Below the pieces are notes generated by a model, which was not told the origin of the DNA, searched no databases, and worked only from the letters and a program-made list of their open reading frames with translations. Of a stretch of 64,000 nucleotides of DNA, positions 37,147 to 52,925 are shown piece after piece. A program made the translations under genes and the position numbers. The stretch lies in IMG/VR virus record IMGVR_UViG_3300008111_000002, positions 1 through 64,000 of that record; one strand, 5' to 3'. Each line of letters begins with the position of its first letter. Position 1 is the first letter of the stretch.

Positions 37147-37369
37147 TGCTGATCACAAAGTATCCTATTATTATGAAAATGATACAGGAAGAATTATTGG
37201 ACAGGTTTATAATCTGGCCCATACTAACATCTACGGAGCAAAAGTAGTCAGCGAATTTAACGAAGAAAAATATTTAGGCCAGTATATTAACGAAACATTT
37301 GCTAAACAGGCTATAGAATATTTCTGGAATTTACAAGAGAGAACACTAACACATGAAACAACCAGTTGA
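37130..37369 (+). CDS. Hypothetical protein
   Basis: Overlaps both neighbours. Confidence 0.55.
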   Translation: MKNWRDADHKVSYYYENDTGRIIGQVYNLAHTNIYGAKVVSEFNEEKYLGQYINETFAKQAIEYFWNLQERTLTHETTS

Positions 37370-39017
37370 TTTAACCCCATTACAAAAAGACTATGCAGTA
37401 TATTTGCCTGCCATTAGTTCTTTTTACTCTACATATATAGATAAGCAAAGAAAAGAAGAATTTGTTTCTAAAGAACGTATTCCTGTAGGATTTGATCGCG
37501 GTATTGAAGGCATGAACTTTCTAAATCCCGAACAAGGTTATTTTTATTACAAGTACGGTCTGTATTCAGCAGGTCATGCACAATTAGACATTGAAAAGAG
37601 TCTAAATCAAGAACTAATGATACAACAAAGAGATCGTAGCAAAACTATGATTTTAGGAGATTCGGGCGGTTATCAGATTGGTAAAGGCGTTATTAAATTT
37701 GACTGGTCAGATTTTGAAGGTGAAAAAGCCAACAAAGTTCGTGAAAAAATCCTAACTTGGTTAGACGTTACTGCTGATTGGGCCATGATGTTAGACGTTC
37801 CGACCTGGGCCTGTGATCACATTCATCAACCCAAAACTGGTCTTAAAGATTTTCAAGACTGCCTTGATAAAACACGTTTTAACAACGAATATTTTATTAA
37901 AAAACGTCTTGGTGTTAAAGACGGCGGAACAAAATTATTAAACGTTTTACAAGGTTCAAACTGGGAAAACGCAGAAGCGTGGTACCAGGGTGTAAAAGAG
38001 TTTTCCGATACTAGCAAATACGGAGACAAAGCAGCAGAAGGATGGGCTATGGGCGGTGCCAATATGTGCAAGATGCCCGTAACTCTTAAACGTCTTATTA
38101 CCATGAAGTTTGACGGTATGTTAGAAGGCAAAGATTGGATGCACTTCTTAGGTACTGCTCAATTAGATTGGAGTTGTTATCTTACCTCTATTCAAAGGCA
38201 AATTAGAAAACATGTTAACGAAAACTTTACCATTTCTTTTGACTGCGCATCACCCTTCATTGCAACAGCGCACGGACTTGTCTATACCAATGCCCAACAC
38301 ACTCCCAAGCGATGGTCGGTCATTATGGACAAAGCGCCAGATACCAAGACTCTTTCAGAATCCAATTTCCCGTTCCCGTTTGAGTCAGAAGTTGGACGAC
38401 GTCTAACAATGGGAGATATTTGTTATTATGATTCAGGTGTACTTAAATCTGAAGATGAATTAGGCTTAGATCCAAAAACTGGAAAACCTATAACATTAGA
38501 TACTACAAATCCAAATCACTATCATATAGTTCCTAACCGCCTAAATAAGCTTGGAAAAATTCCAAGAAAAACTAGTTGGGATTCATTTGCGTATGCTCTT
38601 ATGATGAGTCACAATGTGTATTGTCATATTGCCGCTGTTCAACGTGCAAATCAATTAATGGATATTGAATTATACAATAAACCAAGAATGCCTTGGAGAA
38701 CTTATAAAGCTAAAATGAAAGACAATGATTTTAGCGATGAGATTAGCGATTGGGTTCCAAGAAACATTCTGTATTTTGACAGTTTTGTTGAAGAGCTTTT
38801 TGCCTGCAAAGATAAGGATACAGCATTTGAAATGATTGAGACTGCTACTACTCTAGGTTTCTTAAACGGTGTAGAAGGTGCTCGACTACGTGGCGGAGTA
38901 ACTAGTATTGCTGATAATTTATTTTATGAAGAAGGCGAAGAAAATAAATCTGCTTATCAAGATGAACGAAACGATGGAGAATTAGATAAGCTTGAATCTT
39001 TATTTAGAGAGGACTAA
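37353..39017 (+). CDS. dpdA: TGT-fold transglycosylase, DpdA-like (7-deazaguanine insertion into DNA)
   Basis: Ordered TGT motifs: GDSGGYQ, MMLDVP, NVLQG, GWAMGG, HFLG, SFDCASP (catalytic Asp), SHNV. No CxCxxC zinc triad. Clustered with folE and queE. Confidence 0.8.
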   Translation: MKQPVDLTPLQKDYAVYLPAISSFYSTYIDKQRKEEFVSKERIPVGFDRGIEGMNFLNPEQGYFYYKYGLYSAGHAQLDIEKSLNQELMIQQRDRSKTMILGDSGGYQIGKGVIKFDWSDFEGEKANKVREKILTWLDVTADWAMMLDVPTWACDHIHQPKTGLKDFQDCLDKTRFNNEYFIKKRLGVKDGGTKLLNVLQGSNWENAEAWYQGVKEFSDTSKYGDKAAEGWAMGGANMCKMPVTLKRLITMKFDGMLEGKDWMHFLGTAQLDWSCYLTSIQRQIRKHVNENFTISFDCASPFIATAHGLVYTNAQHTPKRWSVIMDKAPDTKTLSESNFPFPFESEVGRRLTMGDICYYDSGVLKSEDELGLDPKTGKPITLDTTNPNHYHIVPNRLNKLGKIPRKTSWDSFAYALMMSHNVYCHIAAVQRANQLMDIELYNKPRMPWRTYKAKMKDNDFSDEISDWVPRNILYFDSFVEELFACKDKDTAFEMIETATTLGFLNGVEGARLRGGVTSIADNLFYEEGEENKSAYQDERNDGELDKLESLFRED

Positions 39018-39020
39018 TTT

Positions 39021-39230
39021 ATGTATAAAAACAGAATTTTACATCTAACAGAGTCTCACAGATTATTAGATAATCAAATTAACGAAATAGAAAAGACTGG
39101 AAATTTTAAAGACGAAATTCTTTCTGAAATGAAAAAGAAAAAACTAGCCCTTAAAGATGAAATTTCAAGATTAACCAAACTTCAATGGGAACACGATCAC
39201 GAAAGTGTTGACTTTGATGATGATCGATAG
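39021..39230 (+). CDS. DUF465/YdcH-like small coiled-coil protein
   Basis: ESHRLLDNQINEIEK...MKKKKLALKDEISRL pattern. Confidence 0.65.
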   Translation: MYKNRILHLTESHRLLDNQINEIEKTGNFKDEILSEMKKKKLALKDEISRLTKLQWEHDHESVDFDDDR

Positions 39231-39236
39231 TATAAT
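39208..39236 (+). promoter_or_regulatory. Sigma70-type promoter TTGACT-N17-TATAAT
   Basis: Consensus-like, 6 nt before ATG 39243. Confidence 0.75.
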
Positions 39237-39242
39237 TGATTC

Positions 39243-39668
39243 ATGACTGAAAACGATTACGAACTTTTTGCTAATCAAATGGAAGAAAAATATCCAAAGA
39301 TATTTTCAGGCCGTTACGGTGGATTTGCTGTAGGCGCTGGATGGTGGCCTATTGTAGAAGCATTATGTAATCAAATACAACATCATATCGATTGGCGAGC
39401 TAAACAGAATGTTATTGTACCGCAGGTAGTTGTAGAACAGATTAAAGAAAAATTCGGCGGGCTTCGTTTTTACTATCAAGGCGGTGACGACTACATTCAC
39501 GGACTAGTGTCTATGGCAGAGTCTTGGGCTGGATACAGTTGTGAAGAATGTGGTAAGCCTGGAACTAAACGTAGTGGAGGATGGATCAAAACTTTGTGTG
39601 ACGAGCACGAAGCAGAGAGACAGAAGAGATACGAAAGTTATGCTAAACAAAATGGACTAGAACTATGA
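39243..39668 (+). CDS. Phage hypothetical protein with Zn-ribbon
   Basis: GWWPIV, QIKEKFGGLRFYY, CEECGKPG...WIKTLC. Confidence 0.7.
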   Translation: MTENDYELFANQMEEKYPKIFSGRYGGFAVGAGWWPIVEALCNQIQHHIDWRAKQNVIVPQVVVEQIKEKFGGLRFYYQGGDDYIHGLVSMAESWAGYSCEECGKPGTKRSGGWIKTLCDEHEAERQKRYESYAKQNGLEL

Positions 39669-39826
39669 AATGTAATGCATGTGGACTTAGCATTAAAGAA
39701 AGCGGGGTTGGATGCGATTGGAATCAAGGTCGTTGCCCGCATAGAACTCCTATGTTAACCGATTATCATTTTAGATATCTAAATCTTTTTAATTCAATCA
39801 AAAACTTTTTTAAAAGAGGCAAATAA
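39665..39826 (+). CDS. Small Cys-rich protein (53 aa)
   Basis: MKCNACG...CDWNQGRCPH; overlaps both neighbours. Confidence 0.55.
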   Translation: MKCNACGLSIKESGVGCDWNQGRCPHRTPMLTDYHFRYLNLFNSIKNFFKRGK

Positions 39827-40323
39827 TGGCAAACTGGAAAGTATCTCCTTATTATAAAAAATCTTGTGAAGAACACGAACAGTATTTTAAAGACGGTCAG
39901 ATAATTGTTCGCAAAACTGGATTTAGGGGTGCCAGTTTTTTTGTTGAAACTAACGATGACAACCCTCCAGAATTTGAATTTGATTTTGTTCCTGGCGGCG
40001 ATGGCCGCAAAGACAGTATCGATATGTATAACTGCGTAGGTAACAATATTGAAAATGTTGAATTAGATTCAATGTGGGACGGCTGCTGGGAAGATATTGA
40101 TTTTCCCGAGGACTTTGATGAAGATGAAAAAGAACGTCTAATGGAACAGATTGATGAAGAAGGTATCTACGAAGTTCTTGAAGGTAATGAAGGCTGGAGT
40201 CAAAACGAGTGCCAAGCATGGATTTGGGGACCAATCTTGATTGAGGATGAAAATGGCAATCAAGTTCGTATCATTGCAGCAGACGAAAATGGTAATGTTG
40301 TAGATTTTAAGGAAGAAGAATGA
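39826..40323 (+). CDS. Very acidic hypothetical protein
   Basis: Asp/Glu-rich 165-aa ORF. Confidence 0.65.
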   Translation: MANWKVSPYYKKSCEEHEQYFKDGQIIVRKTGFRGASFFVETNDDNPPEFEFDFVPGGDGRKDSIDMYNCVGNNIENVELDSMWDGCWEDIDFPEDFDEDEKERLMEQIDEEGIYEVLEGNEGWSQNECQAWIWGPILIEDENGNQVRIIAADENGNVVDFKEEE

Positions 40324-40853
40324 AACGTGATTACAACTCAGGTGTTGCAGACAGCATCACGTTCTTCACAGGCGTAGAAATTGAACGTACTCCTGCGTAT
40401 GGAATGAAGACTCTATTTGTAGTTAGTGTCCACGATCCATATATTATTATGGAACTTGCTCGCAATAATAATTGCAAACACATTTACTTTGGTGCTAATC
40501 AAAGTTTTAAAACTAAAGGCGTTAATGATGCAGAAACATGGCGCCCTTGGGAAGATATGATCTATGTCTGTCTAGATGCAGAAGATGGTTTTTGGTGTAC
40601 ACTAGACTTTGATGTATCCGAAACTGAAGGTCTTTTGGAGAGTGGACTTACAGAAAAACGTAGATTTATTCCGCAGATTAGTGTAAAATTACCTTATATT
40701 AATCAACTAGGCTATAATGCTACGTTAAAGATTGATGATAAAGATTTTAGTGCAACCAATCCTGGGGTATGGTGCCATAACCTACAGGACCTTCTGAGAA
40801 GAGATCGCTTTACAGATTGGGACCAATATGGCAAGGATGAGATACTCAAATAA
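40320..40853 (+). CDS. Uncharacterised protein in the deazaguanine locus
   Basis: FTGVEIERTPAYGMKTLFV, HIYFGANQSF, NPGVWCH; alpha/beta pattern; function not recognised. Confidence 0.6.
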   Translation: MKRDYNSGVADSITFFTGVEIERTPAYGMKTLFVVSVHDPYIIMELARNNNCKHIYFGANQSFKTKGVNDAETWRPWEDMIYVCLDAEDGFWCTLDFDVSETEGLLESGLTEKRRFIPQISVKLPYINQLGYNATLKIDDKDFSATNPGVWCHNLQDLLRRDRFTDWDQYGKDEILK

Positions 40854-41206
40854 TGGCAACTGGAAAGATTGTAGGGTATGCTAGTCAGGCAAAAATGTCT
40901 GCAATTAGACCTGCCCGCAAAATAAGGAAACAAAAAGTGAAACTTACATTTAGACAACGTATTCGTAATTGGTTGAATAATGACGATTACGAACAAGACA
41001 TTCCTCAAACAGTAGAAGCAGACAGATTTTCTACTGAGGGTATGCGATTACAAATTTATAAAGCCAGCGGTGGGTACGTTATAGAAACTCGCAGTTACGA
41101 TAGTCATAAAGATCGCAATTTTACAACTATGCACGTAATTACCGAAGATCAGGATCTAGGTGACTCACTAGGTAAAATTGTTATGATGGAGGCACTGAAG
41201 CGATGA
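40853..41206 (+). CDS. Hypothetical protein
   Basis: TAATG-coupled ORF. Confidence 0.6.
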   Translation: MATGKIVGYASQAKMSAIRPARKIRKQKVKLTFRQRIRNWLNNDDYEQDIPQTVEADRFSTEGMRLQIYKASGGYVIETRSYDSHKDRNFTTMHVITEDQDLGDSLGKIVMMEALKR

Positions 41207-41412
41207 ACATTAAAGAATTTACAGTTAAACAAAGTACAGGATTTGCACTTAAAGTCAAGAGTTGGAAATGTCTTAGTCCAGCAGATCTAAATAGCATTGA
41301 GTTTATTAACGAGTCCTATAACGATGATGGCGAAATAACTCATTTATCTACATACAATTTTTTCATGACTGATGATGAAATTAAAACTTTGTGCGAAGGA
41401 ATGCTTAAGTGA
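41203..41412 (+). CDS. Hypothetical protein
   Basis: ATGA/GTGA overlaps with neighbours. Confidence 0.55.
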   Translation: MNIKEFTVKQSTGFALKVKSWKCLSPADLNSIEFINESYNDDGEITHLSTYNFFMTDDEIKTLCEGMLK

Positions 41413-41804
41413 TTGTTAAACAAGACATTAGACCTAACAAAATGATTTGGGTGACTTTCCGTAAGGAAGGTATTCATAAATATCCTGCGGCTCTTACAGA
41501 TCCCAATCTAGCTACAGGAGATGAATATGACGTATCGTTTTTGGGTCACCCTCATCGCCACATCTTTCATTTCAGGGTGTGGATCAATGTGCTCCATAAT
41601 GACAGGGACATCGAGTTCATCCAATTCAAACGATGGCTCGAGTCGTTGTATAATGGTCAAGGTGCCGTTCTAAGCCTTGACTATAAAAGTTGTGAAATGA
41701 TGTCAGATGATTTACATGACATTATCAGCAAGAAGTATCCAGGCCGCGAGGTTTGGATTGAGGTCTCCGAGGATGGAGAAAATGGTTCATTCATCAAATA
41801 CTAA
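41409..41804 (+). CDS. QueD-like T-fold protein, DpdL type (putative 7-carboxy-7-deazaguanine decarboxylase)
   Basis: GIH...FLGHPHRHIFHF (LxxxHRHxF), RDIEF, SCEMM, VSEDGENG. Size and motifs fit the T-fold QueD paralogs found in deazaguanine-modifying phages. Confidence 0.7.
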   Translation: MIVKQDIRPNKMIWVTFRKEGIHKYPAALTDPNLATGDEYDVSFLGHPHRHIFHFRVWINVLHNDRDIEFIQFKRWLESLYNGQGAVLSLDYKSCEMMSDDLHDIISKKYPGREVWIEVSEDGENGSFIKY

Positions 41805-41819
41805 CTAAAGGAAATACCG

Positions 41820-42050
41820 ATGAAAACTGAAGTTGAGAAGATTTTTAATGATCTCGACGCCCTGTTGGACTTCTGCAGATTTGAACTTCTGCCGTACAAT
41901 CCAGCAGATTTGTATAATCGCCAAAGTAAAGTTTGGCAAGCTTACGAGGCATCTAAACGCCCTCGTCGACATTTCGATCGCAATGATCGCAATGGAGATC
42001 GAAAGGAGTGGAAGCCACGAGGCACTCAAAATTATCGGTCTAGACACTGA
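41820..42050 (+). CDS. Hypothetical protein with Arg-rich tail
   Basis: AAGGA RBS; TGATG coupling to the glycosyltransferase gene. Confidence 0.55.
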   Translation: MKTEVEKIFNDLDALLDFCRFELLPYNPADLYNRQSKVWQAYEASKRPRRHFDRNDRNGDRKEWKPRGTQNYRSRH

Positions 42051-43144
42051 TGACAATATTCCTAGTTGATTTAGAAGCAGTCGAAACTAGGTACACAGGC
42101 GAGTGGAAAAAACACTTGCCTGTGTTGCTACGAAAGGCAGGACACAATGTCAACATTATATCAGGTCCTACGGACATTCCTAGTGCTACCACTCCTGGAG
42201 CATTTCTCAACTTTGGCGGCACTAATATATATAAAGCTAGTCAAGTGGAGCAGATGGGCCGTTTATTTTGTAGCGGATCCGTTCATCCCGGCGACCACTT
42301 TATTTTTACTGATGCTTGGCATCCAGGCATCATAAACTTAAAATACATGAGCGAGTTACTGAGTATTCCAGTGACTACACACGGCTTATGGCATGCTGGT
42401 AGTTATGATCCCCAAGACTTTTTAGGGCGATTAGTTGGTAACAAACCTTGGGTTAGAAATGCTGAGAAGAGTTTCTATCACGCATTTGACCACAACTATT
42501 TTGCCACAGAGTTTCATGTACATCTGTTTATGAAACAATTACTTAATGACGGATACACTAGTGAAAATCCGTGGTGGAAACAAGACTGGGACGAACGCTA
42601 CGACAGTGGCAAAATTGTTCGTTCAGGTTGGCCAATGGAGTATATGGAAGATACTTTGAGTATGTATAAAGGTATGGAAAAGAAAGATGTTATTCTTTTT
42701 CCGCACAGATTGGCTCCAGAAAAACAATTAGATATCTTTTTAGACTTAAAAGATCAATTACCTCAGTATGAATTTATTGTTTGTCAAGAAAGACAACTGA
42801 CAAAAAACGAATATCATAATTTGTTAGGAGAAAGTAAATTAGTATTCTCAGCTAATTTACAAGAAACTTTAGGTATCAGTTGGTACGAGGGTGCTGTTGT
42901 TAATTCTATTCCAATGGTGCCCGGACGTCTAAGTTACAAAGAAATGGCACTAGAAGAGTTTACATATCCTTCAGAGTGGACAGAATCTTTTGAAAAATAT
43001 AAAATGCACAGAAAAGAAGTTGTAGATAGGATTGTTTACTACATGGAAAATTATCAATCTTTTCTACCACGCCTAAATAAACAGGTAGATTACTTAACTA
43101 AAAATTATTTTAGTTGTAATAAACTATTGGAGATGTTAAAATAA
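42050..43144 (+). CDS. GT-B (GT4-like) glycosyltransferase
   Basis: ILFPHRLAPEKQ and QETLGISWYEGA (Ex7E donor-binding motif); 364 aa, two-domain. Confidence 0.8.
   Translation: MTIFLVDLEAVETRYTGEWKKHLPVLLRKAGHNVNIISGPTDIPSATTPGAFLNFGGTNIYKASQVEQMGRLFCSGSVHPGDHFIFTDAWHPGIINLKYMSELLSIPVTTHGLWHAGSYDPQDFLGRLVGNKPWVRNAEKSFYHAFDHNYFATEFHVHLFMKQLLNDGYTSENPWWKQDWDERYDSGKIVRSGWPMEYMEDTLSMYKGMEKKDVILFPHRLAPEKQLDIFLDLKDQLPQYEFIVCQERQLTKNEYHNLLGESKLVFSANLQETLGISWYEGAVVNSIPMVPGRLSYKEMALEEFTYPSEWTESFEKYKMHRKEVVDRIVYYMENYQSFLPRLNKQVDYLTKNYFSCNKLLEMLK
43114..43142 (+). promoter_or_regulatory. Sigma70-type promoter TTGTAA-N17-(TGT)TAAAAT upstream of folE
   Basis: 17-nt spacer and an extended -10 TG. Confidence 0.5.
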
Positions 43145-43180
43145 TAATGTCATCCACGACTATAACTCGGAGAATAAAAA

Positions 43181-43921
43181 ATGGTTTATGAAAATATGTA
43201 CAAAAGCAATGATGAAGATTTAGATATCATTGTCCCAAGAGAAAAAAATATCAGCGAAGTAATTCGTTCACGAATTAAAGCAGCAAATGCTCGTTTCCAT
43301 GCAAATGATAATATTGCGGACTTTATTGAAAATGAAGATGAAGTAGATCAATTAGTTGACGAAGTAGCAGGTCAATTTCAAGGCGTTTTAAATTCATTAA
43401 TTATAGATACAGAAAATGATCATAATACTCAAGACACAGCTAGACGAGTGGCAAAGATGTTCGTCAGAGAAACTTTTGGAGGACGTTACAAAAATGTTCC
43501 AAAGGTTACGGCTTTCCCTAACATGGGCTATAAGAGTCTTTACACTACTGGTCCTATTAGTATCCGTTCAACTTGCGCTCACCACTTCCAAAATATCGTC
43601 GGTAGATGTTGGGTTGGCATCATACCTGAGGGGGAAGTTATCGGACTCAGTAAGTTCAACAGATTGGTACATCACATTTGCGAACGACCCCAGATTCAAG
43701 AAGAAATGACTACGCAAATTGCAGACGCACTAAAAAAATATGCCAAGACTGAAAATATTGCAGTAGTAGTTAAAGCAGAACATCATTGTATGACTATGCG
43801 AGGTGTTCGTGAGCATGAAAGCGATATGACTACTGCAATTATGTTAGGTGCATTTGGAACTGATCCGGCACTTAAACAAGAGTTTTATGATATCTGCCTA
43901 AGCATGAAAGGACATTCATGA
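43181..43921 (+). CDS. folE: GTP cyclohydrolase I
   Basis: DTARRVAKM, STCAHH, IGLSKFNR, QIQEEMT, AEHHCMTMRG. Confidence 0.95.
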   Translation: MVYENMYKSNDEDLDIIVPREKNISEVIRSRIKAANARFHANDNIADFIENEDEVDQLVDEVAGQFQGVLNSLIIDTENDHNTQDTARRVAKMFVRETFGGRYKNVPKVTAFPNMGYKSLYTTGPISIRSTCAHHFQNIVGRCWVGIIPEGEVIGLSKFNRLVHHICERPQIQEEMTTQIADALKKYAKTENIAVVVKAEHHCMTMRGVREHESDMTTAIMLGAFGTDPALKQEFYDICLSMKGHS

Positions 43922-44139
43922 ATTCCGTTGAAGTAGCAAATAACTTAATTAATCGTGTAAAAAATTTACAAACGTTTGAAGTTAAGCGTATGTTAGACGG
44001 TCCCATAGAATTTAGAGGTGGCCGCATTCCATTTGATATTAAAGCAAATCAGGAATGTGCATGGTTTAAAGTTGTAGCGTTATCTCAACAAGAAGCAGAA
44101 CAAATGGTTGACCGCTGGTTACAAGGAGAGGATGATTGA
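43918..44139 (+). CDS. Hypothetical protein
   Basis: ATGA overlaps with neighbours. Confidence 0.55.
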   Translation: MNSVEVANNLINRVKNLQTFEVKRMLDGPIEFRGGRIPFDIKANQECAWFKVVALSQQEAEQMVDRWLQGEDD

Positions 44140-44579
44140 TAGTTCTCAAACTTTTGGAAAAATTAGGCCGTAAAAGAATTATTATGGATCGTATGAGTAA
44201 CGAACCGTATTTAGAAAGATACTATCTTTTTCTTAAAGAAAGAAATAAATTTCCTTTTAATATTTTTTTACATAAATTTTTAAAAGGTGATCCGGATGAT
44301 CTTCACGATCATCCTTGGCCATATGCTACATTAATTCTTAAAGGCGGCTACTGGGAAACTACTCCAAGGGGAAAATTTTGGAGAGGAGCCGGCCATTTTA
44401 GAACTTGTAGTGCAGAAAGTTACCATCGAATTGAATTGGAACCGGGTGTAGATTGCTGGACACTGTTTATGCCAGGACCCCATAAAAGAGAATGGGGGTT
44501 TGATGTTAACGGTAGGTGGATACAACATGAACAATATTTAAAAGAACGTTATGAACAAGCTCATACTAGATCAATATAA
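44136..44579 (+). CDS. Cupin-fold protein
   Basis: DLHDHPW...ILKGGYWE...YHRIEL cupin metal motifs. Confidence 0.75.
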   Translation: MIVLKLLEKLGRKRIIMDRMSNEPYLERYYLFLKERNKFPFNIFLHKFLKGDPDDLHDHPWPYATLILKGGYWETTPRGKFWRGAGHFRTCSAESYHRIELEPGVDCWTLFMPGPHKREWGFDVNGRWIQHEQYLKERYEQAHTRSI

Positions 44580-45048
44580 AATGTCTAATCTAGTTTCTAA
44601 AATTGCTAGAGATATTACTGTTAGCGATTGGAAACCAGATTATGTTGTAGGTTTAACTAGAGGCGGACTAATTCCTGCTGTAATGTTAAGTCACTATTTT
44701 TCAATACCCATGCATACCCTGGGTGTAAGCCTAAGAGATCAGTTAGGCGGAGAAAGTAATCTATGGATGGCTGAAGATGCACTAGATTATAAAAATATTT
44801 TAGTTGTTGACGATATTAACGATACAGGAGCAACATTTAACTGGATCGTTAATGATTGGAAATCTAGTTGTTTTCCTGACAATCCTAATTGGAATAATGT
44901 ATGGAATCAAAATGTTAAATTTGCAGTATTAGTTGATAATCTATCTAGTGATTTTCAATATAGAATGGATTATGTAGGAATGGAAATTAATAAAGCAGAA
45001 AACAATGTTTGGGTTGATTTTCCGTGGGAGGAATGGTGGGCAAAATGA
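44551..45048 (+). CDS. Type I phosphoribosyltransferase (Gpt/Hpt-like)
   Basis: VVGLTRGGLIPA, PRPP-binding loop ILVVDDINDTGAT, WVDFPWE. Confidence 0.88.
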   Translation: MNKLILDQYKMSNLVSKIARDITVSDWKPDYVVGLTRGGLIPAVMLSHYFSIPMHTLGVSLRDQLGGESNLWMAEDALDYKNILVVDDINDTGATFNWIVNDWKSSCFPDNPNWNNVWNQNVKFAVLVDNLSSDFQYRMDYVGMEINKAENNVWVDFPWEEWWAK

Positions 45049-45431
45049 AACAATCTATAATGGAGGATCAACCTCCTTTTATTGAAGATAGTAAGGCACC
45101 ATGGGATAACTTACTAGAAGAAGACTTTCATGTAAAAGTTTTCTACGACAAGTATCCTGTTACAGAAGGGCATCTTTTATTTGTGCCTAAATATAATACT
45201 GTCGCAGTCTTAATGGATGCATTTGAAAGTGCTGTTCGTGATGGTATGCGTATGGTAGACGAAGGTACATGTGACGGGTTTAACGTTGGTTTTAATTACG
45301 GCAATGCAGCTGGGCAAACAGTAGGTTGGCCACACGTTCATTTAATTCCAAGACGCAAGGGCGATATGGAAGACCCAACAGGCGGAGTTCGTCACGTTAT
45401 ACCAGAGAAAGGAAATTATAAAAAATGGTAA
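45045..45431 (+). CDS. HIT-family nucleotide hydrolase
   Basis: PVTEGHLLFVPK, GFNVGFNYGNAAGQTVGWPHVHLIPR. Confidence 0.9.
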   Translation: MKQSIMEDQPPFIEDSKAPWDNLLEEDFHVKVFYDKYPVTEGHLLFVPKYNTVAVLMDAFESAVRDGMRMVDEGTCDGFNVGFNYGNAAGQTVGWPHVHLIPRRKGDMEDPTGGVRHVIPEKGNYKKW

Positions 45432-45610
45432 AACAAGGATCTAAATGGGGAACAGGAAATGGTAAAATATTTCAGGTAATAAATGTTATTGAAGTTGATG
45501 AACATACCTGGGTTTACTATCGAGATATTAAAGTAATTAACGAAGAAATTAAAGAATATAGTTGTTACATTGAAAGCTTTTTACAAAGATTTACTCCCCT
45601 ACCAGAATGA
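45425..45610 (+). CDS. Hypothetical protein
   Basis: Overlapping small ORF in the operon. Confidence 0.5.
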   Translation: MVKQGSKWGTGNGKIFQVINVIEVDEHTWVYYRDIKVINEEIKEYSCYIESFLQRFTPLPE

Positions 45611-45804
45611 ATATTATACAAATACCGTGGACCGGTTATCAAAGTAATATTTGGTGGAATAATGTTTGCGCTGACGTAGTAGAACACTTTGGTCTACCGG
45701 GAAACAAATACACTACAGAAGTGAGCGAAAATGCAATGAAATTTTGTTTCCGTGACGAAAAAGATGCGTTAATGTGCAGACTATTGGTAAGCGAATATGT
45801 ATGA
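45607..45804 (+). CDS. Hypothetical protein
   Basis: Overlapping small ORF in the operon. Confidence 0.5.
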   Translation: MNIIQIPWTGYQSNIWWNNVCADVVEHFGLPGNKYTTEVSENAMKFCFRDEKDALMCRLLVSEYV

Positions 45805-46337
45805 AAGAAAAATTTAAAAAAACATATATGGAAACTGCAAAAATTTTTGCAGAACTTAGTTATGCACGTAGATTACATGTTGGTGCTATTGTAGTTAAGA
45901 ATGATAGAATTATTTCAATTGGTTATAACGGTATGCCCGCCGGGTGGGATAACGATTGCGAAACAAAACAATACATGGATCAAGATGCCGGGGGCTGGCT
46001 AAATCCAGACGAAATAGAAGAACGGTGGCCGTATACAGAAGAAACGTTGGAACAATTCAGCGACGATACTGTATATAAAAAAACATCAAGATATAATTAT
46101 AAAACTCGTCCAGAAGTTCTTCATGCAGAATCAAATGCTATTGCTAAATTAGCAAAATCAAATGACAGCGGAGATGGAGCAGACATATTCATTACTCACA
46201 GTCCATGCATCGAATGTGCTAAATTAATCTATCAATCTGGAATACGCAGAGTATTTTATGGGCAAGGATACAGAGACGATTCGGGTATTGAATTTTTAAA
46301 AAAATCAGGAGTTGAAATTGAAAAGCTGGACACTTGA
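45801..46337 (+). CDS. dCMP deaminase
   Basis: VGAIVV, SIGYNG, HAESNAI and PCIECAK zinc motifs. Probable start is ATG 45801. Confidence 0.92.
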   Translation: MKEKFKKTYMETAKIFAELSYARRLHVGAIVVKNDRIISIGYNGMPAGWDNDCETKQYMDQDAGGWLNPDEIEERWPYTEETLEQFSDDTVYKKTSRYNYKTRPEVLHAESNAIAKLAKSNDSGDGADIFITHSPCIECAKLIYQSGIRRVFYGQGYRDDSGIEFLKKSGVEIEKLDT

Positions 46338-46482
46338 AGTAGAAGAGGATCCCAAAACTGGAGATTGCATGTTGACCTTTCCTCCGGATCTGCTAGAACA
46401 AGCAGGATGGAAAGAAGGTGATACATTAGAATGGATTGATCAAGGTGATGGTACTTGGCAATTGTTAAAAAAGAATGTATAA
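46318..46482 (+). CDS. AbrB/MazE/SpoVT-like small DNA-binding protein (54 aa)
   Basis: TTG-started ORF absent from the track: MKSWTLEVEEDPKTGDCMLTFPPDLLEQAGWKEGDTLEWIDQGDGTWQLLKKNV. Confidence 0.65.
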   Translation: MKSWTLEVEEDPKTGDCMLTFPPDLLEQAGWKEGDTLEWIDQGDGTWQLLKKNV

Positions 46483-46483
46483 T
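46455..46483 (+). promoter_or_regulatory. Sigma70-type promoter TTGGCA-N17-TATAAT upstream of queE
   Basis: 17-nt spacer, 5 nt before ATG 46489. Confidence 0.6.
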
Positions 46484-46488
46484 AAATT

Positions 46489-47349
46489 ATGAGTAAAATT
46501 AAAATTGCAGAGCTGTTTTACAGCATACAAGGTGAAGGACGCTATATGGGTGTGCCTTCTGTTTTCTTACGTACATTTGGATGCAACTTTAAATGTGCAG
46601 GCTTTGGTATGCCACACGGTAAGATTAGCATTGAAGCAGATGACATTGCATACACTCATGCAAATATTGAATCGTTTCAAAAATACGAAGAACTTCCTCT
46701 AGTGTCTACAGGATGTGATAGTTATGCTAGCTGGCATCCTGCTTTTAAAGATCTTAGTCCAATGCTTACTAGTGAAGCTATTGTAGATCGCATTATGGAA
46801 ATTATTCCGTTTAATGAATGGCGTGATGAGCATCTAGTCATTACAGGCGGTGAGCCGTTACTAGGGTGGCAACGTGCTTATCCTGAGTTGCTAGAACATC
46901 CTAAAATGAAATCTTTGAAAGAAATTACTTTTGAAACAAATGGTACTCAAAAACTTGATCCTAAATTTAAAGATTATTTGATTAAATGGGGTTTAAAAGA
47001 AAGAGGATACAATAAACTTACGTTTTCAGTTAGTGCCAAACTAAGTTGTTCTGGGGAGGAACGGCATGAAGCAATTCGTCCAGATGTTATACGCGAATAT
47101 GAGGAGGTAGGCTACACATATCTTAAATTTGTAGTAGCGACAGAAGAAGATGCAGAAGAAGCAATTGAAACAATCGACATTTACAGAGCCGAAGGGTTTG
47201 CGGGACCCGTATATCTTATGCCAGTTGGCGGGGTGGAGTCTGTTTATAGTCTTAATAATCGTAGGGTCGCTGAATTAGCAATGAAGAACGGATTACGTTA
47301 TTCAGATCGTTTACAGGTACCATTATTTAAAAATGAGTGGGGAACTTAA
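46489..47349 (+). CDS. queE: 7-carboxy-7-deazaguanine synthase (radical SAM)
   Basis: ELFYSIQGEG, FLRTFGCNFKC...GCDS, VITGGEP, FETNG, SAK, LKFVV, YLMP, RLQV. Confidence 0.9.
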   Translation: MSKIKIAELFYSIQGEGRYMGVPSVFLRTFGCNFKCAGFGMPHGKISIEADDIAYTHANIESFQKYEELPLVSTGCDSYASWHPAFKDLSPMLTSEAIVDRIMEIIPFNEWRDEHLVITGGEPLLGWQRAYPELLEHPKMKSLKEITFETNGTQKLDPKFKDYLIKWGLKERGYNKLTFSVSAKLSCSGEERHEAIRPDVIREYEEVGYTYLKFVVATEEDAEEAIETIDIYRAEGFAGPVYLMPVGGVESVYSLNNRRVAELAMKNGLRYSDRLQVPLFKNEWGT

Positions 47350-47801
47350 TGAAAAAATATATTAAAAAAATATTTGGTATTGATAAAATTGAAGAAACCA
47401 AAGCAAAATTAGAAACTGAGAAAGAAGCATTACAAGCTGCAAGAGATAAAGCAGTTGCAGAAACTGTAAAAGCACAAGAAGAAGAAGAACTTGCTAAAAT
47501 AACTCCAAAAGAACGTGCTACTAGAAAAAAAGAACCTTGGGTTGCAGTTTTACAAACACATGTTAATAAAGAAAATTTAAGAAACGGTTTTTTTGAACTT
47601 GACTGGAATGAATACTTTGTTGTACAATTAAAACAACAAGGCTATGGTCTTGACGGTGACCCAGACGAAGAAATTGTAGATCGCTGGTTCCGTGCATTAT
47701 GTAATGATATTGCGGGAGATGAAGGTATTAATATGGATCGTCGCGGTGCAGGTTATATTAATGTTCAACAAATTGGTTCAGGAAAATCTGAGGTTTCATG
47801 A
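47349..47801 (+). CDS. Hypothetical protein
   Basis: Coiled-coil N-terminus, FELDWNEYF motif. Confidence 0.65.
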   Translation: MKKYIKKIFGIDKIEETKAKLETEKEALQAARDKAVAETVKAQEEEELAKITPKERATRKKEPWVAVLQTHVNKENLRNGFFELDWNEYFVVQLKQQGYGLDGDPDEEIVDRWFRALCNDIAGDEGINMDRRGAGYINVQQIGSGKSEVS

Positions 47802-48808
47802 CATATATTCTAGTCGATACGGCTAATACATTTTTTCGTGCTCGTCATGTAATTAATGGCGATACTGATATGAAGCTCGGTATGGCTTTTCATATTACTT
47901 TAAATTCTATTAAAAAAGCATGGAAAGATTTTAATGGATCTCATGTAGTATTTTGTCTCGAAGGACGCAGTTGGCGTAAGGATCACTACGCTCCTTACAA
48001 ACGCAATCGTGCAGAAACTAGGGCTGCTCTTACCCCCTCTCAACAGGAAGAAGATAAACTATTTTGGGAAGCATTTGATACATTTAAAGAGTTTATTACA
48101 GATAAAACTAACTGTACTGTGATGCAACATCCGCAATTGGAAGCTGACGATTTAATTGCTGGTTGGATTCAGAGTCATCCTAATGACGATCATGTTATTA
48201 TTTCAACCGATACTGATTTTGTACAATTAATTGCTTCCAATGTTAAACAATATAACGGAATAACTGAAACAACTATTACACACGAAGGTTATTTTGACGA
48301 CAAGGGAAAATCAGTTATTGATAAAAAAACCAAAGAAGCAAAAGCTGCTCCTGACCCCGAATGGTTATTATTTGAAAAATGTATGCGAGGAGACACTAGT
48401 GATAATATCTTTAGTGCATATCCGGGTGTTCGTGTGAAAGGTACAAAAAATAAAGTTGGTCTTACAGAAGCATTTGCTGATAGAAATAGTAAAGGGTTTA
48501 GTTGGAACAATTTAATGTTGCAACGATGGATTGATCATGAAGGCCAAGAACATCGTGTACTTGATGATTATCAAAGAAATTGTCTGTTAATCGATTTAAG
48601 AAAGCAACCAATTGAGATTAGAGAAATAATTAAAAATACAATTAACGAATCCATATCAGCAAACAAAGATGTTGGACAAGTTGGTATTAAATTATTAAAG
48701 TTTTGCAATCTGTATGACCTAAAAAAGATTTCTGAACAGGCGCAGACTTATGCAGAACCGTTAAATGCAAGATATAAAGCAACAGAACTAATGACAAGGG
48801 AAGTATGA
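47798..48808 (+). CDS. rnh: 5'-3' exonuclease / T4 RNase H-like (FEN family)
   Basis: ILVD, YKRNR, LEADDLIA, ISTDTDFVQL, GDTSDNI. Confidence 0.9.
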   Translation: MTYILVDTANTFFRARHVINGDTDMKLGMAFHITLNSIKKAWKDFNGSHVVFCLEGRSWRKDHYAPYKRNRAETRAALTPSQQEEDKLFWEAFDTFKEFITDKTNCTVMQHPQLEADDLIAGWIQSHPNDDHVIISTDTDFVQLIASNVKQYNGITETTITHEGYFDDKGKSVIDKKTKEAKAAPDPEWLLFEKCMRGDTSDNIFSAYPGVRVKGTKNKVGLTEAFADRNSKGFSWNNLMLQRWIDHEGQEHRVLDDYQRNCLLIDLRKQPIEIREIIKNTINESISANKDVGQVGIKLLKFCNLYDLKKISEQAQTYAEPLNARYKATELMTREV

Positions 48809-51438: not shown

Positions 51439-51736
51439 AAAATTTTTTCGACCGCCAGAAAAAGTTGTTAATGAATGGCCGGAAATTTTTGAGGACATGT
51501 ATATGAGCACCATGCCTCTCTATTATACAAAATCTATGCAGATTAAATTTGATAATGGGAGGATATGGCAGCTCAATATACAAGAGTTAGTAGTTGAACA
51601 TGGTAGTGATGAATTATCTACTAAACTATTAGAAACATTTAAAGAATATCAACAAGACATCACCGGTGTAGATTTTGAAATTGATATCGATAAATTAAAA
51701 AAAGATATTAAAAAATCAATTAAGAAAATTCTTTAA
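51431..51736 (+). CDS. Hypothetical protein
   Basis: Last plus-strand gene; convergent overlap with the island gene. Confidence 0.6.
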   Translation: MPKKFFRPPEKVVNEWPEIFEDMYMSTMPLYYTKSMQIKFDNGRIWQLNIQELVVEHGSDELSTKLLETFKEYQQDITGVDFEIDIDKLKKDIKKSIKKIL

Positions 51737-52925
51737 AATACTTTTTAGTACTAGATACAATTTCATCAAGGTATTGTTTTCTAAAGTCTAATTGTTTATA
51801 AATGTATAAATTATGTTCAACGATTGACAACCATTTGTTATAATATTTTTCTTTATCATCATTTATCCAAGATAAAAAAGATTCGTGAAATTTAGCGAAT
51901 CTTTTTTTATGATCCGCAATATCGTCATAACTTGTATCTATGAAATCAGTTCTAAATCCATAATTTTGTAATTTTTTTAATATTCCAACTTGTCCAAGTA
52001 TAATAAATGGATGTCCCATAGCAATTGGGCGAAATGTTTTTTCTGTTATAAACATTCCCGGATCCTCAAAAAAAGTTTCTGTTGAAACGGTTAAGAATGT
52101 ATTTTCAAAAATACATAAATTACTTTTTCCAGCAAGATGTGCTGTTCTTAATTCTTCTGTCGAAACATCAGCTTCTATTGGATATTGTGTTTTTAAAGTT
52201 TTACTATAAGTTTCCGATGATTCATCTAAAAATGTAGGATTTAATGATTCTAAATTAGTATCAAAAAAAGATCCACCAGAAACGATTCCTCGAGATAGTA
52301 AATTATTTTTTGCTAAAAAATATAAATGATCTGTTCTATGACTTCTGTGCGCCCTGTTTAAGCTATTAAAAAGTTTAGCACGATTCTTTATTGATTTATA
52401 AAAAATAGGATCATATTGTTTTTTCCAAGCCTCTCCAACCCATTCTATACCTTCAATAAATTCTAAAGTTGGTTTTAGATTATTTTGCCGACACCACTTA
52501 TTGTATTGTTCTTTTGCTTTTAAATTTCCAGATACGATTAGTACACTCTTAGAAGGTAATTCTAATTTATCAAAAGATTCTGTCAGGTATCTATAACAAT
52601 CATATTTTGATGTAAAACTATCTCCTTCAACTACAGAAATTATTACGATTCTTAATTTTTTTTGTTTTGTAGCCTCTATCACATGAATCGGAATATTATC
52701 TAAAATTTTAAAACTATCTTGATGTTCGTCTGTACACCAATCATAAGAATGTCTACTAACTTCAATAAAATATATTCCGGGATAATCATAATTTTTACTA
52801 CAAACAAATTCTAATTCAGGATGTGTATTTCTTTTAACAAAATATTCATAAGGTCTGACATTTTTTACCTGATCTATATGAGAAAGATTTATTTCATTCT
52901 GATTATCAAAATAACACTGTATCAT
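51720..52925 (-). CDS. GT10/fucosyltransferase-like GT-B protein, paralog 1
   Basis: FNSLNRAHRSHR, TETFF..FITEKTFRPIAMGHPFIILG, GFRTDFIDTSYD. Confidence 0.55.
   Translation of the reverse strand: MIQCYFDNQNEINLSHIDQVKNVRPYEYFVKRNTHPELEFVCSKNYDYPGIYFIEVSRHSYDWCTDEHQDSFKILDNIPIHVIEATKQKKLRIVIISVVEGDSFTSKYDCYRYLTESFDKLELPSKSVLIVSGNLKAKEQYNKWCRQNNLKPTLEFIEGIEWVGEAWKKQYDPIFYKSIKNRAKLFNSLNRAHRSHRTDHLYFLAKNNLLSRGIVSGGSFFDTNLESLNPTFLDESSETYSKTLKTQYPIEADVSTEELRTAHLAGKSNLCIFENTFLTVSTETFFEDPGMFITEKTFRPIAMGHPFIILGQVGILKKLQNYGFRTDFIDTSYDDIADHKKRFAKFHESFLSWINDDKEKYYNKWLSIVEHNLYIYKQLDFRKQYLDEIVSSTKKYFKEFS

What the first reader, a model, noticed from the sequence alone, without database searches (positions are those of the whole stretch)
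37353..47349. 7-deazaguanine DNA-modification locus with DpdA, DpdL-like, FolE and QueE but no QueC or canonical QueD
Seen: a TGT-fold enzyme, FolE, QueE and a T-fold protein with LxxxHRHxF, all in one co-oriented 10-kb block. No QueC, QueF or ArcS motifs were found in this window. Established: FolE-QueD-QueE make CDG, QueC makes preQ0, and phage DpdA swaps guanine in DNA for the deaza base. As I recall, the LxxxHRHxF QueD paralog (DpdL) was described as a CDG decarboxylase giving unsubstituted 7-deazaguanine. Inference: the genome carries dDG or a CDG-derived base as anti-restriction armour, and may add further chemistry (see the following findings).
Basis: partly seen in the sequence, partly recalled or inferred. 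Interest (0 to 1): 0.8.

Follow-up and report, generated by a model that had tools for sequence, protein, structure and literature searches.

The report
Phage 7-deazaguanine DNA-modification gene cluster
A large freshwater phage carries a known type of gene cluster (DpdL type) that should replace guanine in its DNA with a 7-deazaguanine base, but the cluster also keeps a sugar-transferring enzyme and other unstudied genes, so the final base is probably not yet known.

Summary
Window 37353-47349 is one co-oriented block. It encodes a TGT-fold DpdA-like enzyme (554 aa), a DpdL-like protein with LGHPHRHIF, FolE and a QueE-like radical SAM enzyme. No QueC or QueD is in the 64-kb window.

The "no QueD" point is probably a boundary effect. 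The window is the first 64 kb of a 209,836-bp contig that starts inside a giant gene. In every related contig that reaches far enough upstream of that gene, a Pfam-PTPS QueD lies about 4.5 kb before its start. Phage PA5oct also encodes QueD about 51 kb upstream of its DpdA homologue.

This is therefore the DpdL-type pathway of Hutinet et al. 2023 (FolE, QueD, QueE, no QueC, DpdL, DpdA), not a new pathway.

What that paper does not discuss is the rest of the module. Among 29 related loci spanning DpdA to QueE:
- an unknown 177-aa protein is in 29;
- a GT4-type glycosyltransferase is in 28;
- a small cupin is in 25;
- a purine phosphoribosyltransferase is in 22;
- a HIT protein is in 18.

In isolated phages the glycosyltransferase always lies 0-3 kb from DpdL wherever the two genes co-occur. 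phiST, where dDG was measured, lacks it. The end product here is unknown: plain dDG or a further-decorated deazaguanine.

The parts
37353..39017 (+). DpdA-like transglycosylase (554 aa). It has a TGT-type barrel core in roughly residues 1-360 and a helical C-terminal extension.
   Evidence: DSGGYQ motif. AF2 model pLDDT 89. Foldseek top PDB hit is TGT 6ygv, E 3.9e-5. BFVD phage transglycosylase hits. hhalign to the ACP17 424-aa DpdA candidate gives 96.5% probability. Invariant residues are S72, D103, S104, G106, P150, H264 and D297. The family has 860 clusters at 50% identity.
40320..40853 (+). Conserved 177-aa protein of unknown function (h177), alpha/beta fold.
   Evidence: Present in 29 of 29 loci spanning DpdA to QueE. 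A 31%-identical homologue lies directly upstream of the ACP17 DpdA candidate. The PA5oct homologue lies 28 kb from the cluster. AF2 pLDDT 81, with no PDB fold match at E < 0.09. No Pfam, PHROG or NCBIfam hit.
40853..41206 (+). 117-aa accessory ORF of unknown function.
   Evidence: Present in 18 of 29 loci. No family hit.
41409..41804 (+). DpdL-like QueD paralogue (131 aa) with LGHPHRHIF. Proposed CDG-converting enzyme.
   Evidence: phrog_17812, 9e-33. 55% identical to ACP17 DpdL and 34% to phiST CGPG_00067. Family-invariant residues are H23, H49-R50-H51, S94-C95-E96-M97 and E121-D122. The motif definition comes from PMC10516641.
41820..42050 (+). Small conserved ORF (76 aa) between DpdL and the glycosyltransferase.
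   Evidence: A homologue is found in 61 of 80 related loci. No family hit.
42050..43144 (+). GT-B, GT4-like glycosyltransferase (364 aa) with an E-x7-E motif (ETLGISWYE).
   Evidence: ESM Atlas: viral clusters named glycosyl transferase family 1, and structural neighbours in GT4/GT1 families with TM 0.71-0.97. The ACP17 orthologue hits Pfam Glycos_transf_1 weakly, 2.5e-4. Present in 28 of 29 loci. Adjacent to or within 3 kb of DpdL in Phosso, PA5oct-like phages, ACP17, X1, BUDD and BCSR5.
43181..43921 (+). GTP cyclohydrolase I (FolE).
   Evidence: Pfam PF01227, 5e-47, 160 bits against a cut-off of 27. The CAHH and HHC motifs are visible in the translation. Present in 22 of 29 loci.
44136..44579 (+). 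Small phage cupin (147 aa; the PHROG name is 'cysteine dioxygenase').
   Evidence: phrog_4786, 5e-39. Atlas structural neighbours are cupins. Present in 25 of 29 loci. It travels with PRT-QueD-QueE in other lineages.
44551..45048 (+). Type I purine phosphoribosyltransferase (165 aa), Gpt/Hpt-like.
   Evidence: Pfam Pribosyltran, 2e-12. The best NCBIfam matches are xanthine PRT at 2e-9 and HGPRT at 7e-7, both below cut-off. A VVDDINDTGAT PRPP loop is present. Present in 22 of 29 loci. The PA5oct homologue lies in its cluster.
45024..45431 (+). HIT-family nucleotide hydrolase or transferase (135 aa).
   Evidence: Pfam HIT, 1.2e-8. NCBIfam HinT, 6e-11. Present in 18 of 29 loci.
45774..46337 (+). 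dCMP deaminase. An accessory gene that occupies the slot where more distant relatives carry QueD.
   Evidence: Pfam dCMP_cyt_deam_1, 3e-21. Present in only 7 of 29 loci. Relatives carry QueD between PRT/HIT and QueE.
46489..47349 (+). QueE-like radical SAM enzyme (CDG synthase) with a CX3CX39C cluster motif.
   Evidence: phrog_2076, 4.5e-52. NCBIfam QueE models score 1.8e-15 to 1.7e-9, below cut-offs. C32, C36 and C76 are conserved in all 17 aligned homologues. Present in 29 of 29 loci.

Best explanation
The block is a DpdL-type 7-deazaguanine DNA-modification module of a large phage related to Pseudomonas phage PA5oct.

Proposed pathway:
- FolE turns GTP into dihydroneopterin triphosphate.
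- A QueD converts that to CPH4. QueD is not in the window. By conserved gene order it should lie about 9 kb upstream of the window start; otherwise the host enzyme would serve.
- QueE makes 7-carboxy-7-deazaguanine (CDG).
- No QueC was found in the window or in any related locus fetched, so the pathway as seen stops at CDG and does not reach preQ0.
- The DpdL paralogue keeps the three metal-binding histidines but has Leu in place of the catalytic Cys. It converts CDG; the proposal in the literature is decarboxylation to 7-deazaguanine.
- The 554-aa TGT-fold DpdA-like enzyme exchanges guanine in phage DNA for the deaza base.
- The Gpt/Hpt-like phosphoribosyltransferase most simply recycles the released guanine into GMP. 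Alternatively it ribosylates the deaza base.
- The GT4-type glycosyltransferase and the 177-aa protein are as conserved in this lineage as DpdL. They probably act on the same base or on the modified DNA. The final product may therefore be a decorated deazaguanine rather than plain dDG.

What is shown here: gene identities, folds, conserved order, and absence of QueC from the sequence examined. What is inferred: every enzymatic step, DNA as the target, and any role of the glycosyltransferase.
For: Gene identities: FolE, QueE-like, DpdL homology and motif, TGT fold of the 554-aa protein.

Conserved order PolB - s245 - DpdA - h177 - DpdL - GT - FolE - cupin - PRT - HIT - QueE - 5'-3' exonuclease in 29 loci. 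Partial synteny with PA5oct and ACP17.

QueC is absent from the window and from all related loci, while unrelated QueD loci do hit it.

QueD lies upstream of the giant gene in all 16 loci that reach far enough, and it passes the Pfam PTPS cut-off. PA5oct encodes FolE and two QueD paralogues 51 kb upstream of its DpdA homologue.

PA5oct DNA resists restriction enzymes in a way that suggests a modified G (PMC12191111).

Linkage of the glycosyltransferase to DpdL: 17 of the 22 phage records with a homologue also carry DpdL, and there the two genes lie 0-3 kb apart.
Against: No activity of DpdL has been demonstrated. dpdL plus dpdA of phiST and ACP17 gave no dDG in E. coli.

Nothing here shows that the transglycosylase acts on DNA rather than tRNA. 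It has no conserved cysteine cluster like the zinc site of canonical TGT. HMMER cannot link it to TGT, and hhalign does not link it to the BcepGomr DpdA.

QueD could not be shown on the window's own contig. The contigs that carry QueD diverge from the window after position 6258.

The glycosyltransferase has no obvious acceptor on unsubstituted 7-deazaguanine. DpdL also occurs without it in phiST, RHph_I1_18 and Ahp1.
Confidence: 0.65

Rival explanations
1. Plain dDG, as in phiST. DpdL decarboxylates CDG and DpdA inserts 7-deazaguanine. The glycosyltransferase, h177, cupin and HIT genes serve unrelated functions and are neighbours only through shared early-gene organisation.
For: phiST carries dDG with DpdA3, DpdL, FolE, QueD and QueE and no glycosyltransferase. 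DpdL occurs without the glycosyltransferase in RHph_I1_18 and Ahp1. In PA5oct, h177 lies 28 kb from the cluster.
Against: Glycosyltransferase homologues are found in only 22 of 50,697 phage records. In 17 of those they lie within 3 kb of DpdL, across hosts as different as Sinorhizobium, Pseudomonas, Acidovorax, Xanthomonas and Burkholderia. The gene is present in 28 of 29 metagenomic clusters. ACP17 dpdA plus dpdL alone gave no dDG.
Confidence: 0.3
2. Pre-replicative route. The phosphoribosyltransferase joins CDG or 7-deazaguanine to PRPP, as in tubercidin and toyocamycin biosynthesis (my own knowledge). The nucleotide is converted to a dNTP and incorporated by the phage family B polymerase. 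The TGT-fold protein plays a minor or different role.
For: The PRT sits between FolE and QueE and travels with cupin-QueD-QueE in several lineages. PolB lies immediately upstream. A MazG-like pyrophosphatase is at 12474-12845.
Against: The DpdA-like gene is in 29 of 29 clusters but PRT in only 22. No kinase or reductase specific to such a nucleotide was identified. Hutinet et al. argue for post-replicative insertion wherever DpdA is present.
Confidence: 0.1
3. The module acts on tRNA or on small molecules rather than DNA. For example, the TGT-fold enzyme modifies tRNA. Or FolE, the PTPS-like DpdL and the glycosyltransferase make a pterin glycoside, as cyanobacteria do with FolE, PTPS and a pteridine glycosyltransferase (my own knowledge).
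For: TGT enzymes are primarily tRNA enzymes. The best solved-structure match is a tRNA enzyme. FolE, a PTPS paralogue and a roughly 360-aa GT-B enzyme are the parts list of pterin glycoside synthesis.
Against: DpdL lacks the catalytic Cys needed for PTPS or QueD chemistry. QueE is in 29 of 29 clusters. The closest viral structural matches include nt-1 R9TGF0 and phiST M4SLA5. PA5oct DNA behaves as G-modified.
Confidence: 0.05

Closest known systems
Cellulophaga phage phiST dDG system (DpdA3, DpdL, FolE, QueD, QueE; Hutinet et al. 2023, PMC10516641)
   Same: A DpdL with LxxxHRHxF (34% identity), FolE, QueE and a TGT-fold transglycosylase. No QueC. The QueD is of the CxxxHGY type.
   Different: phiST DpdA3 is 259 aa and only marginally similar (hhalign 74%, Foldseek E 4.8e-3). 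phiST has a MazG in the cluster but no GT4 glycosyltransferase, h177, cupin, PRT or HIT. Its DNA base has been measured. Here nothing has been measured.
Acidovorax phage ACP17 and Pseudomonas jumbo phage PA5oct clusters (closest cultured relatives)
   Same: Both share the DpdA-like, GT4-like and DpdL genes and QueE next to PolB. Identities to PA5oct are DpdA 43%, GT 42%, DpdL 54%. Identities to ACP17 are GT 35%, DpdL 55%, h177 31%. PA5oct keeps QueD about 51 kb upstream, next to the same SOD-like gene.
   Different: ACP17 has QueD and FolE inside the cluster. Its 424-aa transglycosylase is linked to the window's protein only by profile comparison. PA5oct has FolE and two QueD paralogues elsewhere, and its PolB is split by a homing endonuclease. 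The chemistry of the modification is unknown in both.
preQ0/dPreQ0-type DpdA systems (FolE-QueD-QueE-QueC plus DpdA1/DpdA2/bDpdA), e.g. BcepGomr
   Same: The early pathway and the base-exchange logic.
   Different: QueC is absent here. The BcepGomr DpdA is not detectably related by hhalign.
Tubercidin/toyocamycin 7-deazapurine nucleoside pathways (my own knowledge)
   Same: FolE, QueD and QueE chemistry combined with a phosphoribosyltransferase that can act on a 7-deazaguanine base.
   Different: Those pathways make free nucleoside antibiotics in Streptomyces and have no TGT-fold enzyme. Whether the phage PRT accepts a deaza base is untested.
Phage DNA glycosyltransferases of the GT-B fold (T4 alpha/beta-glucosyltransferases) and tRNA queuosine mannosyltransferase
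   Same: GT-B fold enzymes that decorate an already modified base in a nucleic acid. A queuosine mannosyltransferase cluster is among the Atlas structural neighbours (TM 0.74).
   Different: There is no sequence-level relation, and the TM score is no better than for generic GT4 enzymes. The acceptor here is unknown.

Membership tests
DpdA / TGT superfamily transglycosylase | TGT-type (beta/alpha)8 barrel fold | tested here: met
   AF2 model pLDDT 89, pTM 0.89. The top PDB hit is TGT 6ygv (E 3.9e-5, probability 1.00, TM 0.50 on the target), and QTRT1/2 ranks third. BFVD matches include Motura 'tRNA guanine transglycosylase', nt-1 R9TGF0 and phiST M4SLA5.
DpdA / TGT superfamily transglycosylase | Catalytic aspartates in the DSGG[FY]Q motif and in the later beta-strand motif | tested here: inconclusive
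   D103 (in DSGGYQ) and D297 are invariant in 67 diverse homologues. The DSGG, VQG, HLLG and YDS motifs align with the ACP17 protein. Equating them with TGT Asp102 and Asp280 rests on my memory of TGT numbering. No residue-level structural alignment was available.
DpdA / TGT superfamily transglycosylase | Structural zinc site (CxCxxC...H) of canonical TGT | tested here: not met
   No cysteine is invariant or nearly invariant in the family alignment, and no such motif occurs in the sequence. Whether this site defines phage DpdA subfamilies was not checked.
DpdA / TGT superfamily transglycosylase | Recognised by the Pfam TGT model | tested here: not met
   No Pfam hit. However, the BcepGomr, phiST and ACP17 proteins taken as phage DpdAs also have none, so this does not discriminate.
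DpdA / TGT superfamily transglycosylase | Exchanges guanine in DNA (not tRNA) for a 7-deazaguanine | not testable with these tools
   Needs biochemistry or mass spectrometry of virion DNA.
DpdL (proposed CDG decarboxylase) | LxxxHRHxF in place of the QueD motif CxxxHGH | tested here: met
   L45-G-H-P-H49-R50-H51-I-F53. L45, H49, R50, H51 and F53 are kept in at least 95% of 82 homologues. The motif is as defined in PMC10516641.
DpdL (proposed CDG decarboxylase) | Sequence homology to the founding members (phiST CGPG_00067, ACP17) | tested here: met
   tblastn gives ACP17 55% identity (4e-35) and phiST 34% (7e-8). phrog_17812, 9e-33.
DpdL (proposed CDG decarboxylase) | T-fold / relation to QueD | tested here: inconclusive
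   My hhalign of DpdL against phage QueD aligns only the C-terminal SCEM...EDGEN region (probability 26%, E 7e-4). There is no Pfam PTPS hit, as is also true of phiST and ACP17 DpdL. The paper reports HHpred 99.9% for phiST DpdL.
DpdL (proposed CDG decarboxylase) | Genome context: DpdA, FolE, QueE and QueD present, QueC absent | tested here: inconclusive
   DpdA, FolE and QueE are present, and QueC is absent from the window. QueD is absent from the window but conserved upstream of the giant gene in relatives. It could not be shown on this contig. 146 kb of the contig was not examined.
DpdL (proposed CDG decarboxylase) | CDG decarboxylase activity | not testable with these tools
   Unproven even for the founding members.
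QueE (CDG synthase) | Radical SAM enzyme with three cluster cysteines whose best family matches are QueE | tested here: met
   phrog_2076, 4.5e-52. The five best NCBIfam matches are QueE models, all below their equivalog cut-offs. C32, C36 and C76 are invariant in the 17-sequence alignment, with a 39-residue spacer before the third Cys.
FolE (GTP cyclohydrolase I) | Pfam PF01227 above the gathering score | tested here: met
   160 bits against a cut-off of 27. NCBIfam FolE models score 2.5e-50 but below their equivalog cut-offs.
QueD / QueC in the window | CxxxHG[HY] PTPS protein; PP-loop SGGxDS QueC | tested here: not met
   Motif scans, phmmer and tblastn were all negative in the six frames of the window.
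GT4-type GT-B glycosyltransferase | GT-B fold with a C-terminal E-x7-E motif | tested here: inconclusive
   The Atlas feature and structure neighbours are GT1/GT4 families, but the structure used was that of the top hit, not of this protein. ETLGISWYE is visible in the sequence. The window protein has no Pfam hit. The ACP17 orthologue hits Glycos_transf_1 at 2.5e-4, below the cut-off.

The most novel reading that the evidence does not exclude
The conserved DpdA - DpdL - GT4 glycosyltransferase core makes a sugar-decorated 7-deazaguanine in DNA. h177, the cupin and the HIT and PRT enzymes may contribute, and the phage's own nucleotide-sugar genes may feed it. A glycosylated deazapurine in DNA has not been described. 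The core is shared by this very abundant metagenomic clade and by PA5oct, ACP17, Phosso, X1/BUDD and BCSR5. This would also explain why ACP17 dpdA plus dpdL alone gave no product and why the G modification of PA5oct is still unidentified.
Probability: 0.25. Interest if true: 0.85.

Novelty: new variant of a known kind. Interest (0 to 1): 0.55.

Why it matters
7-deazaguanine replacement is one of the main ways phages hide guanine from restriction enzymes, and DpdL is its least understood branch: no activity has been shown and reconstitution failed.

This locus shows that the DpdL branch is far larger than the few isolates described. The transglycosylase family alone has 860 clusters at 50% identity and about 8,000 at 90%, all unannotated.

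In most of this branch DpdL comes with a glycosyltransferase and other enzymes that published models do not include. PA5oct and ACP17 are cultured phages that carry the same genes, so the identity of the base can be tested directly. PA5oct is a candidate therapeutic phage, and its DNA is already known to be targeted by modification-dependent END nucleases.

Tried and rejected
1. QueD remnant in the empty slot. Relatives carry QueD between HIT and QueE. I translated window 45380-45830 in three frames. The small ORFs there (45425-45610, 45607-45804) show no similarity to QueD. The weak phmmer scores (E 0.8-2.6) are noise.

2. A QueD-like domain in the 381-aa ORF 56436-57581(-). tblastn E was 0.31 and phmmer E 1.4. 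The BLASTP alignment is a short YRxWR coincidence, and Pfam finds nothing. Rejected.

3. Sequence-level links of the 554-aa protein to TGT. Pfam, NCBIfam, PHROGs, and phmmer and profile hmmsearch against PDB were all empty. hhalign to the BcepGomr DpdA was not significant. Only structure and hhalign to ACP17 gave a link.

4. h177. Atlas gave no usable lead, and the fold search against PDB had no match better than E 0.098.

5. Finding QueD on the window's own contig. Six attempts failed:
- a single-protein scan hit the same limit;
- a degenerate 59-nt pattern for the N-terminus of the nearest QueD matched 5 contigs, not this one;
- the 5' half of the giant gene is not on this contig;
- no QueD cluster with longest contig 209,836 or 185,915 appears among the best 120;
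- hopping beyond the 3' end of the window ran into a 4,631-aa tail-fibre-like gene longer than the flank limit.

6. The near megablast search of the block against 50,697 phage records found nothing.

7. Supplementary tables of Hutinet 2023 are not held, so I could not check which DpdA subfamily the authors assigned to ACP17.

Full report
**What is there.** Window 37353-47349 is a run of co-oriented, tightly packed + strand ORFs lying between a family B DNA polymerase (33309-35975) and a 5'-3' exonuclease (47798-48808). The named genes check out.
- FolE, 43181-43921: Pfam GTP_cyclohydroI, 5e-47.
- QueE-like radical SAM protein, 46489-47349: PHROG 2076, 4.5e-52. The five best NCBIfam matches are QueE models, though below their cut-offs.
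- A 131-aa protein, 41409-41804, carrying LGHPHRHIF.
- A 554-aa protein, 37353-39017, carrying DSGGYQ.

The block also holds genes the finding did not name:
- a 177-aa protein of unknown function (40320-40853);
- a 364-aa GT-B glycosyltransferase (42050-43144);
- a small cupin (44136-44579);
- a type I purine phosphoribosyltransferase (44551-45048);
- a HIT protein (45024-45431);
- a dCMP deaminase (45774-46337).

**The transglycosylase.** No sequence method recognises the 554-aa protein. Pfam, NCBIfam, PHROGs, phmmer against PDB, and a 67-sequence profile against PDB are all empty. This is not informative on its own, because the BcepGomr, phiST and ACP17 proteins taken as phage DpdAs also lack a Pfam hit.

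The family is very large and unannotated. There are 7,982 clusters at 90% identity among the 8,000 candidates scored, and 860 representatives at 50% identity. An AlphaFold2 model on the alignment is confident (pLDDT 89.3, pTM 0.89). Its best solved-structure match is Zymomonas tRNA-guanine transglycosylase (E 3.9e-5), and mouse QTRT1/2 ranks third. The remaining hits are generic TIM barrels.

Against predicted viral structures it matches:
- the protein annotated tRNA guanine transglycosylase in phage Motura (2.9e-11);
- Vibrio phage nt-1 R9TGF0 (7.5e-8);
- the Dinoroseobacter phage protein annotated queuosine tRNA-ribosyltransferase (1.8e-4);
- phiST M4SLA5, 259 aa (4.8e-3).

hhalign links the family profile to the 424-aa ACP17 protein beside that phage's DpdL. 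The probability is 96.5%, and the DSGG, VQG, HLLG and YDS motifs are in register. Invariant residues are S72, D103, S104, G106, P150, H264 and D297. No cysteine cluster is conserved, so the canonical TGT zinc site is not there.

I accept the protein as a TGT-fold, DpdA-like enzyme. Its subfamily is unresolved: it looks structurally nearer the nt-1 type than the phiST type.

**DpdL.** Hutinet et al. 2023 define DpdL as a QueD paralogue in which CxxxHGH becomes LxxxHRHxF, and they propose that it decarboxylates CDG. [quoted passage not shown] Expression of dpdL plus dpdA from phiST and from ACP17 in E. coli gave no dDG.

The window protein is 55% identical to the ACP17 DpdL and 34% to the phiST DpdL. 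Across 82 homologues, H23, H49-R50-H51, S94-C95-E96-M97 and E121-D122 are invariant. My own profile comparison with phage QueD is weak. The T-fold assignment therefore rests on homology to the published members.

**Where the window comes from, and QueD.** The window is positions 1-64000 of IMGVR_UViG_3300008111_000002, which is JGI contig Ga0114344_1000002 (209,836 bp). A second contig, Ga0620986_01283 (185,915 bp), is about 98% identical over the block.

The window has no QueD or QueC by motif scan, phmmer or tblastn. But the contig begins inside a giant gene. The window's first ORF is the C-terminal half of a protein of about 2,900 aa. In contigs 97.5% identical to window 118-6258, the order upstream is QueD - KdsA-like - GT8-like - UvdE - SOD-like - HNH - IscA-like - giant gene. 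QueD ends about 9 kb before window position 1, and it passes the Pfam PTPS cut-off (54.5 bits).

The same order holds in all 16 fetched loci that extend far enough. They cover giant-gene variants from 50% to 100% identity, and there is no counter-example.

PA5oct is the closest isolate (DpdA 43%, GT 42%, DpdL 54%). It encodes FolE gp231, a CxxxHGH QueD (gp230) and a CxxxHGY QueD (gp226) 51 kb upstream of its DpdA homologue. They lie next to the same SOD-like gene, gp223.

Two caveats remain. The QueD-bearing contigs diverge from the window after position 6258, so they are mosaic relatives rather than the same genome. And I could not show QueD on this very contig. I put about 0.85 on the phage encoding QueD. 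In more distant relatives QueD sits inside the cluster, between PRT/HIT and QueE. In the window that slot holds two small ORFs and the dCMP deaminase, which are not QueD remnants.

**QueC.** BcepGomr QueC hits ten unrelated QueD loci but none of the 80 DpdA-clade loci, the window or the upstream loci. As far as it can be seen, the pathway stops at CDG, as in the published DpdL systems.

**The conserved module.** In the 29 related loci that span DpdA to QueE, the counts are as follows:

| Gene | Loci (of 29) |
|---|---|
| DpdA, h177, DpdL, QueE | 29 |
| Glycosyltransferase | 28 |
| Cupin | 25 |
| FolE | 22 |
| PRT | 22 |
| HIT | 18 |
| dCMP deaminase | 7 |
| Extra radical SAM | 5 |
| QueD | 0 |

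In the phage isolate collection the glycosyltransferase has homologues in only 22 of 50,697 records. Seventeen of these carry DpdL, and there the two genes are 0-3 kb apart: Phosso, eleven PA5oct-like records, ACP17, X1, BUDD and BCSR5. DpdL also occurs without the glycosyltransferase in phiST, RHph_I1_18 and Ahp1. The glycosyltransferase therefore looks like an added step in one branch, not a requirement for DpdL.

The protein has an E-x7-E motif, and its neighbours in the ESM Atlas are GT1/GT4 enzymes. The ACP17 orthologue touches Pfam Glycos_transf_1. h177 has a confident alpha/beta model with no PDB match. The 2023 paper mentions neither a glycosyltransferase nor a phosphoribosyltransferase. 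Full-text searches found no later work on DpdL or on these partners.

**Mechanism.** Most likely this is the DpdL pathway.
- FolE, QueD and QueE make CDG.
- DpdL converts CDG.
- The DpdA-like enzyme swaps the product into DNA.
- The PRT most simply salvages the guanine released. A role in ribosylating the deaza base, as in tubercidin biosynthesis (my own knowledge), is the alternative.

The tight linkage of the GT4 enzyme to DpdL makes a further decoration plausible. The same genome carries nucleotide-sugar enzymes: UDP-glucose dehydrogenase-like genes at 13122-13913 and 54597-55727, and an epimerase/dehydratase at 57565-58530. What the acceptor would be is unknown, because plain 7-deazaguanine offers no obvious handle. 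PA5oct DNA resists several restriction enzymes in a pattern that suggests modified G, and the base has not been identified.

**Verdict.** This is a known kind of system (the DpdL branch of 7-deazaguanine DNA modification), seen here in a very abundant uncultured clade. It has a divergent transglycosylase and a conserved set of extra enzymes that current models do not explain. The supposed lack of QueD is most likely a contig-boundary effect.

Noticed in passing
L002:20038-21042 (JGI Ga0620986_01283); the corresponding site in the window is 47349-47405: A contig about 98% identical to the window carries an extra 334-aa radical SAM gene directly after QueE that the window lacks. Its NCBIfam matches are weak (viperin-like 1.5e-12, also MoaA and NrdG). 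Homologues occur in five other related clusters. In four of these (L019, L021, L022, L059) the gene sits before QueE and FolE, PRT and HIT are missing.
   Followed up: partly
window 46489-47349: The QueE of this clade has its three conserved cluster cysteines spaced CX3CX39C (C32, C36, C76). ACP17 and BcepGomr QueE have the usual CX3CX2C. A roughly 38-residue insertion sits inside the cluster-binding loop.
   Followed up: partly
window 51720-63638 (- strand): A lower-GC (about 28-30%) minus-strand cluster encodes a UDP-glucose/GDP-mannose dehydrogenase, a 2OG-Fe(II) oxygenase, an NAD epimerase/dehydratase, a twitch-domain radical SAM protein (NF033640, 2.4e-95), GT2-like proteins and a methyltransferase-like protein. 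This points to synthesis of an unusual nucleotide sugar. Any link to the GT4 enzyme in the deazaguanine block is untested.
   Followed up: partly
window 12474-12845 (+): A MazG/PRA-PH-type nucleotide pyrophosphohydrolase (Pfam 5e-12) lies 25 kb upstream of the block. phiST has a MazG-like gene directly beside its DpdL.
   Followed up: no
window 1-6258: The contig starts inside a giant gene (about 2,900 aa in relatives). Six IMG/VR contigs are 97.5% identical to window 118-6258 but drop to 35-44% protein identity immediately after 6258. This is either a recombination mosaic or a hypervariable cassette. By coordinate arithmetic, the related 185,915-bp contig also appears to end within this gene.
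   Followed up: partly
L168 (PA5oct NC_071039 166507-176938): PA5oct encodes two QueD paralogues 2 kb apart: gp230 with the canonical CxxxHGH motif and gp226 with CxxxHGY. It also has DpdL in the DpdA cluster. The annotated QueD genes of phiST, ACP17 and the metagenomic clade are all of the CxxxHGY type.
   Followed up: partly
window 33309-35975 versus L001:3605-8831: The family B DNA polymerase is one intact 888-aa ORF here. In PA5oct it is split in two by a Hef-like homing endonuclease gene.
   Followed up: no
window 13122-13913 and 54597-55727: There are two separate UDP-glucose/GDP-mannose dehydrogenase-like genes in one 64-kb window. The first is short, at 263 aa.
   Followed up: no
L169:1-5263 (about 10-15 kb beyond the 3' end of the window): Just past the window, relatives encode a 4,631-aa protein with weak carbohydrate-binding and FG-GAP hits, followed by a Collar-domain protein. 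The structural and tail-fibre region starts there.
   Followed up: no
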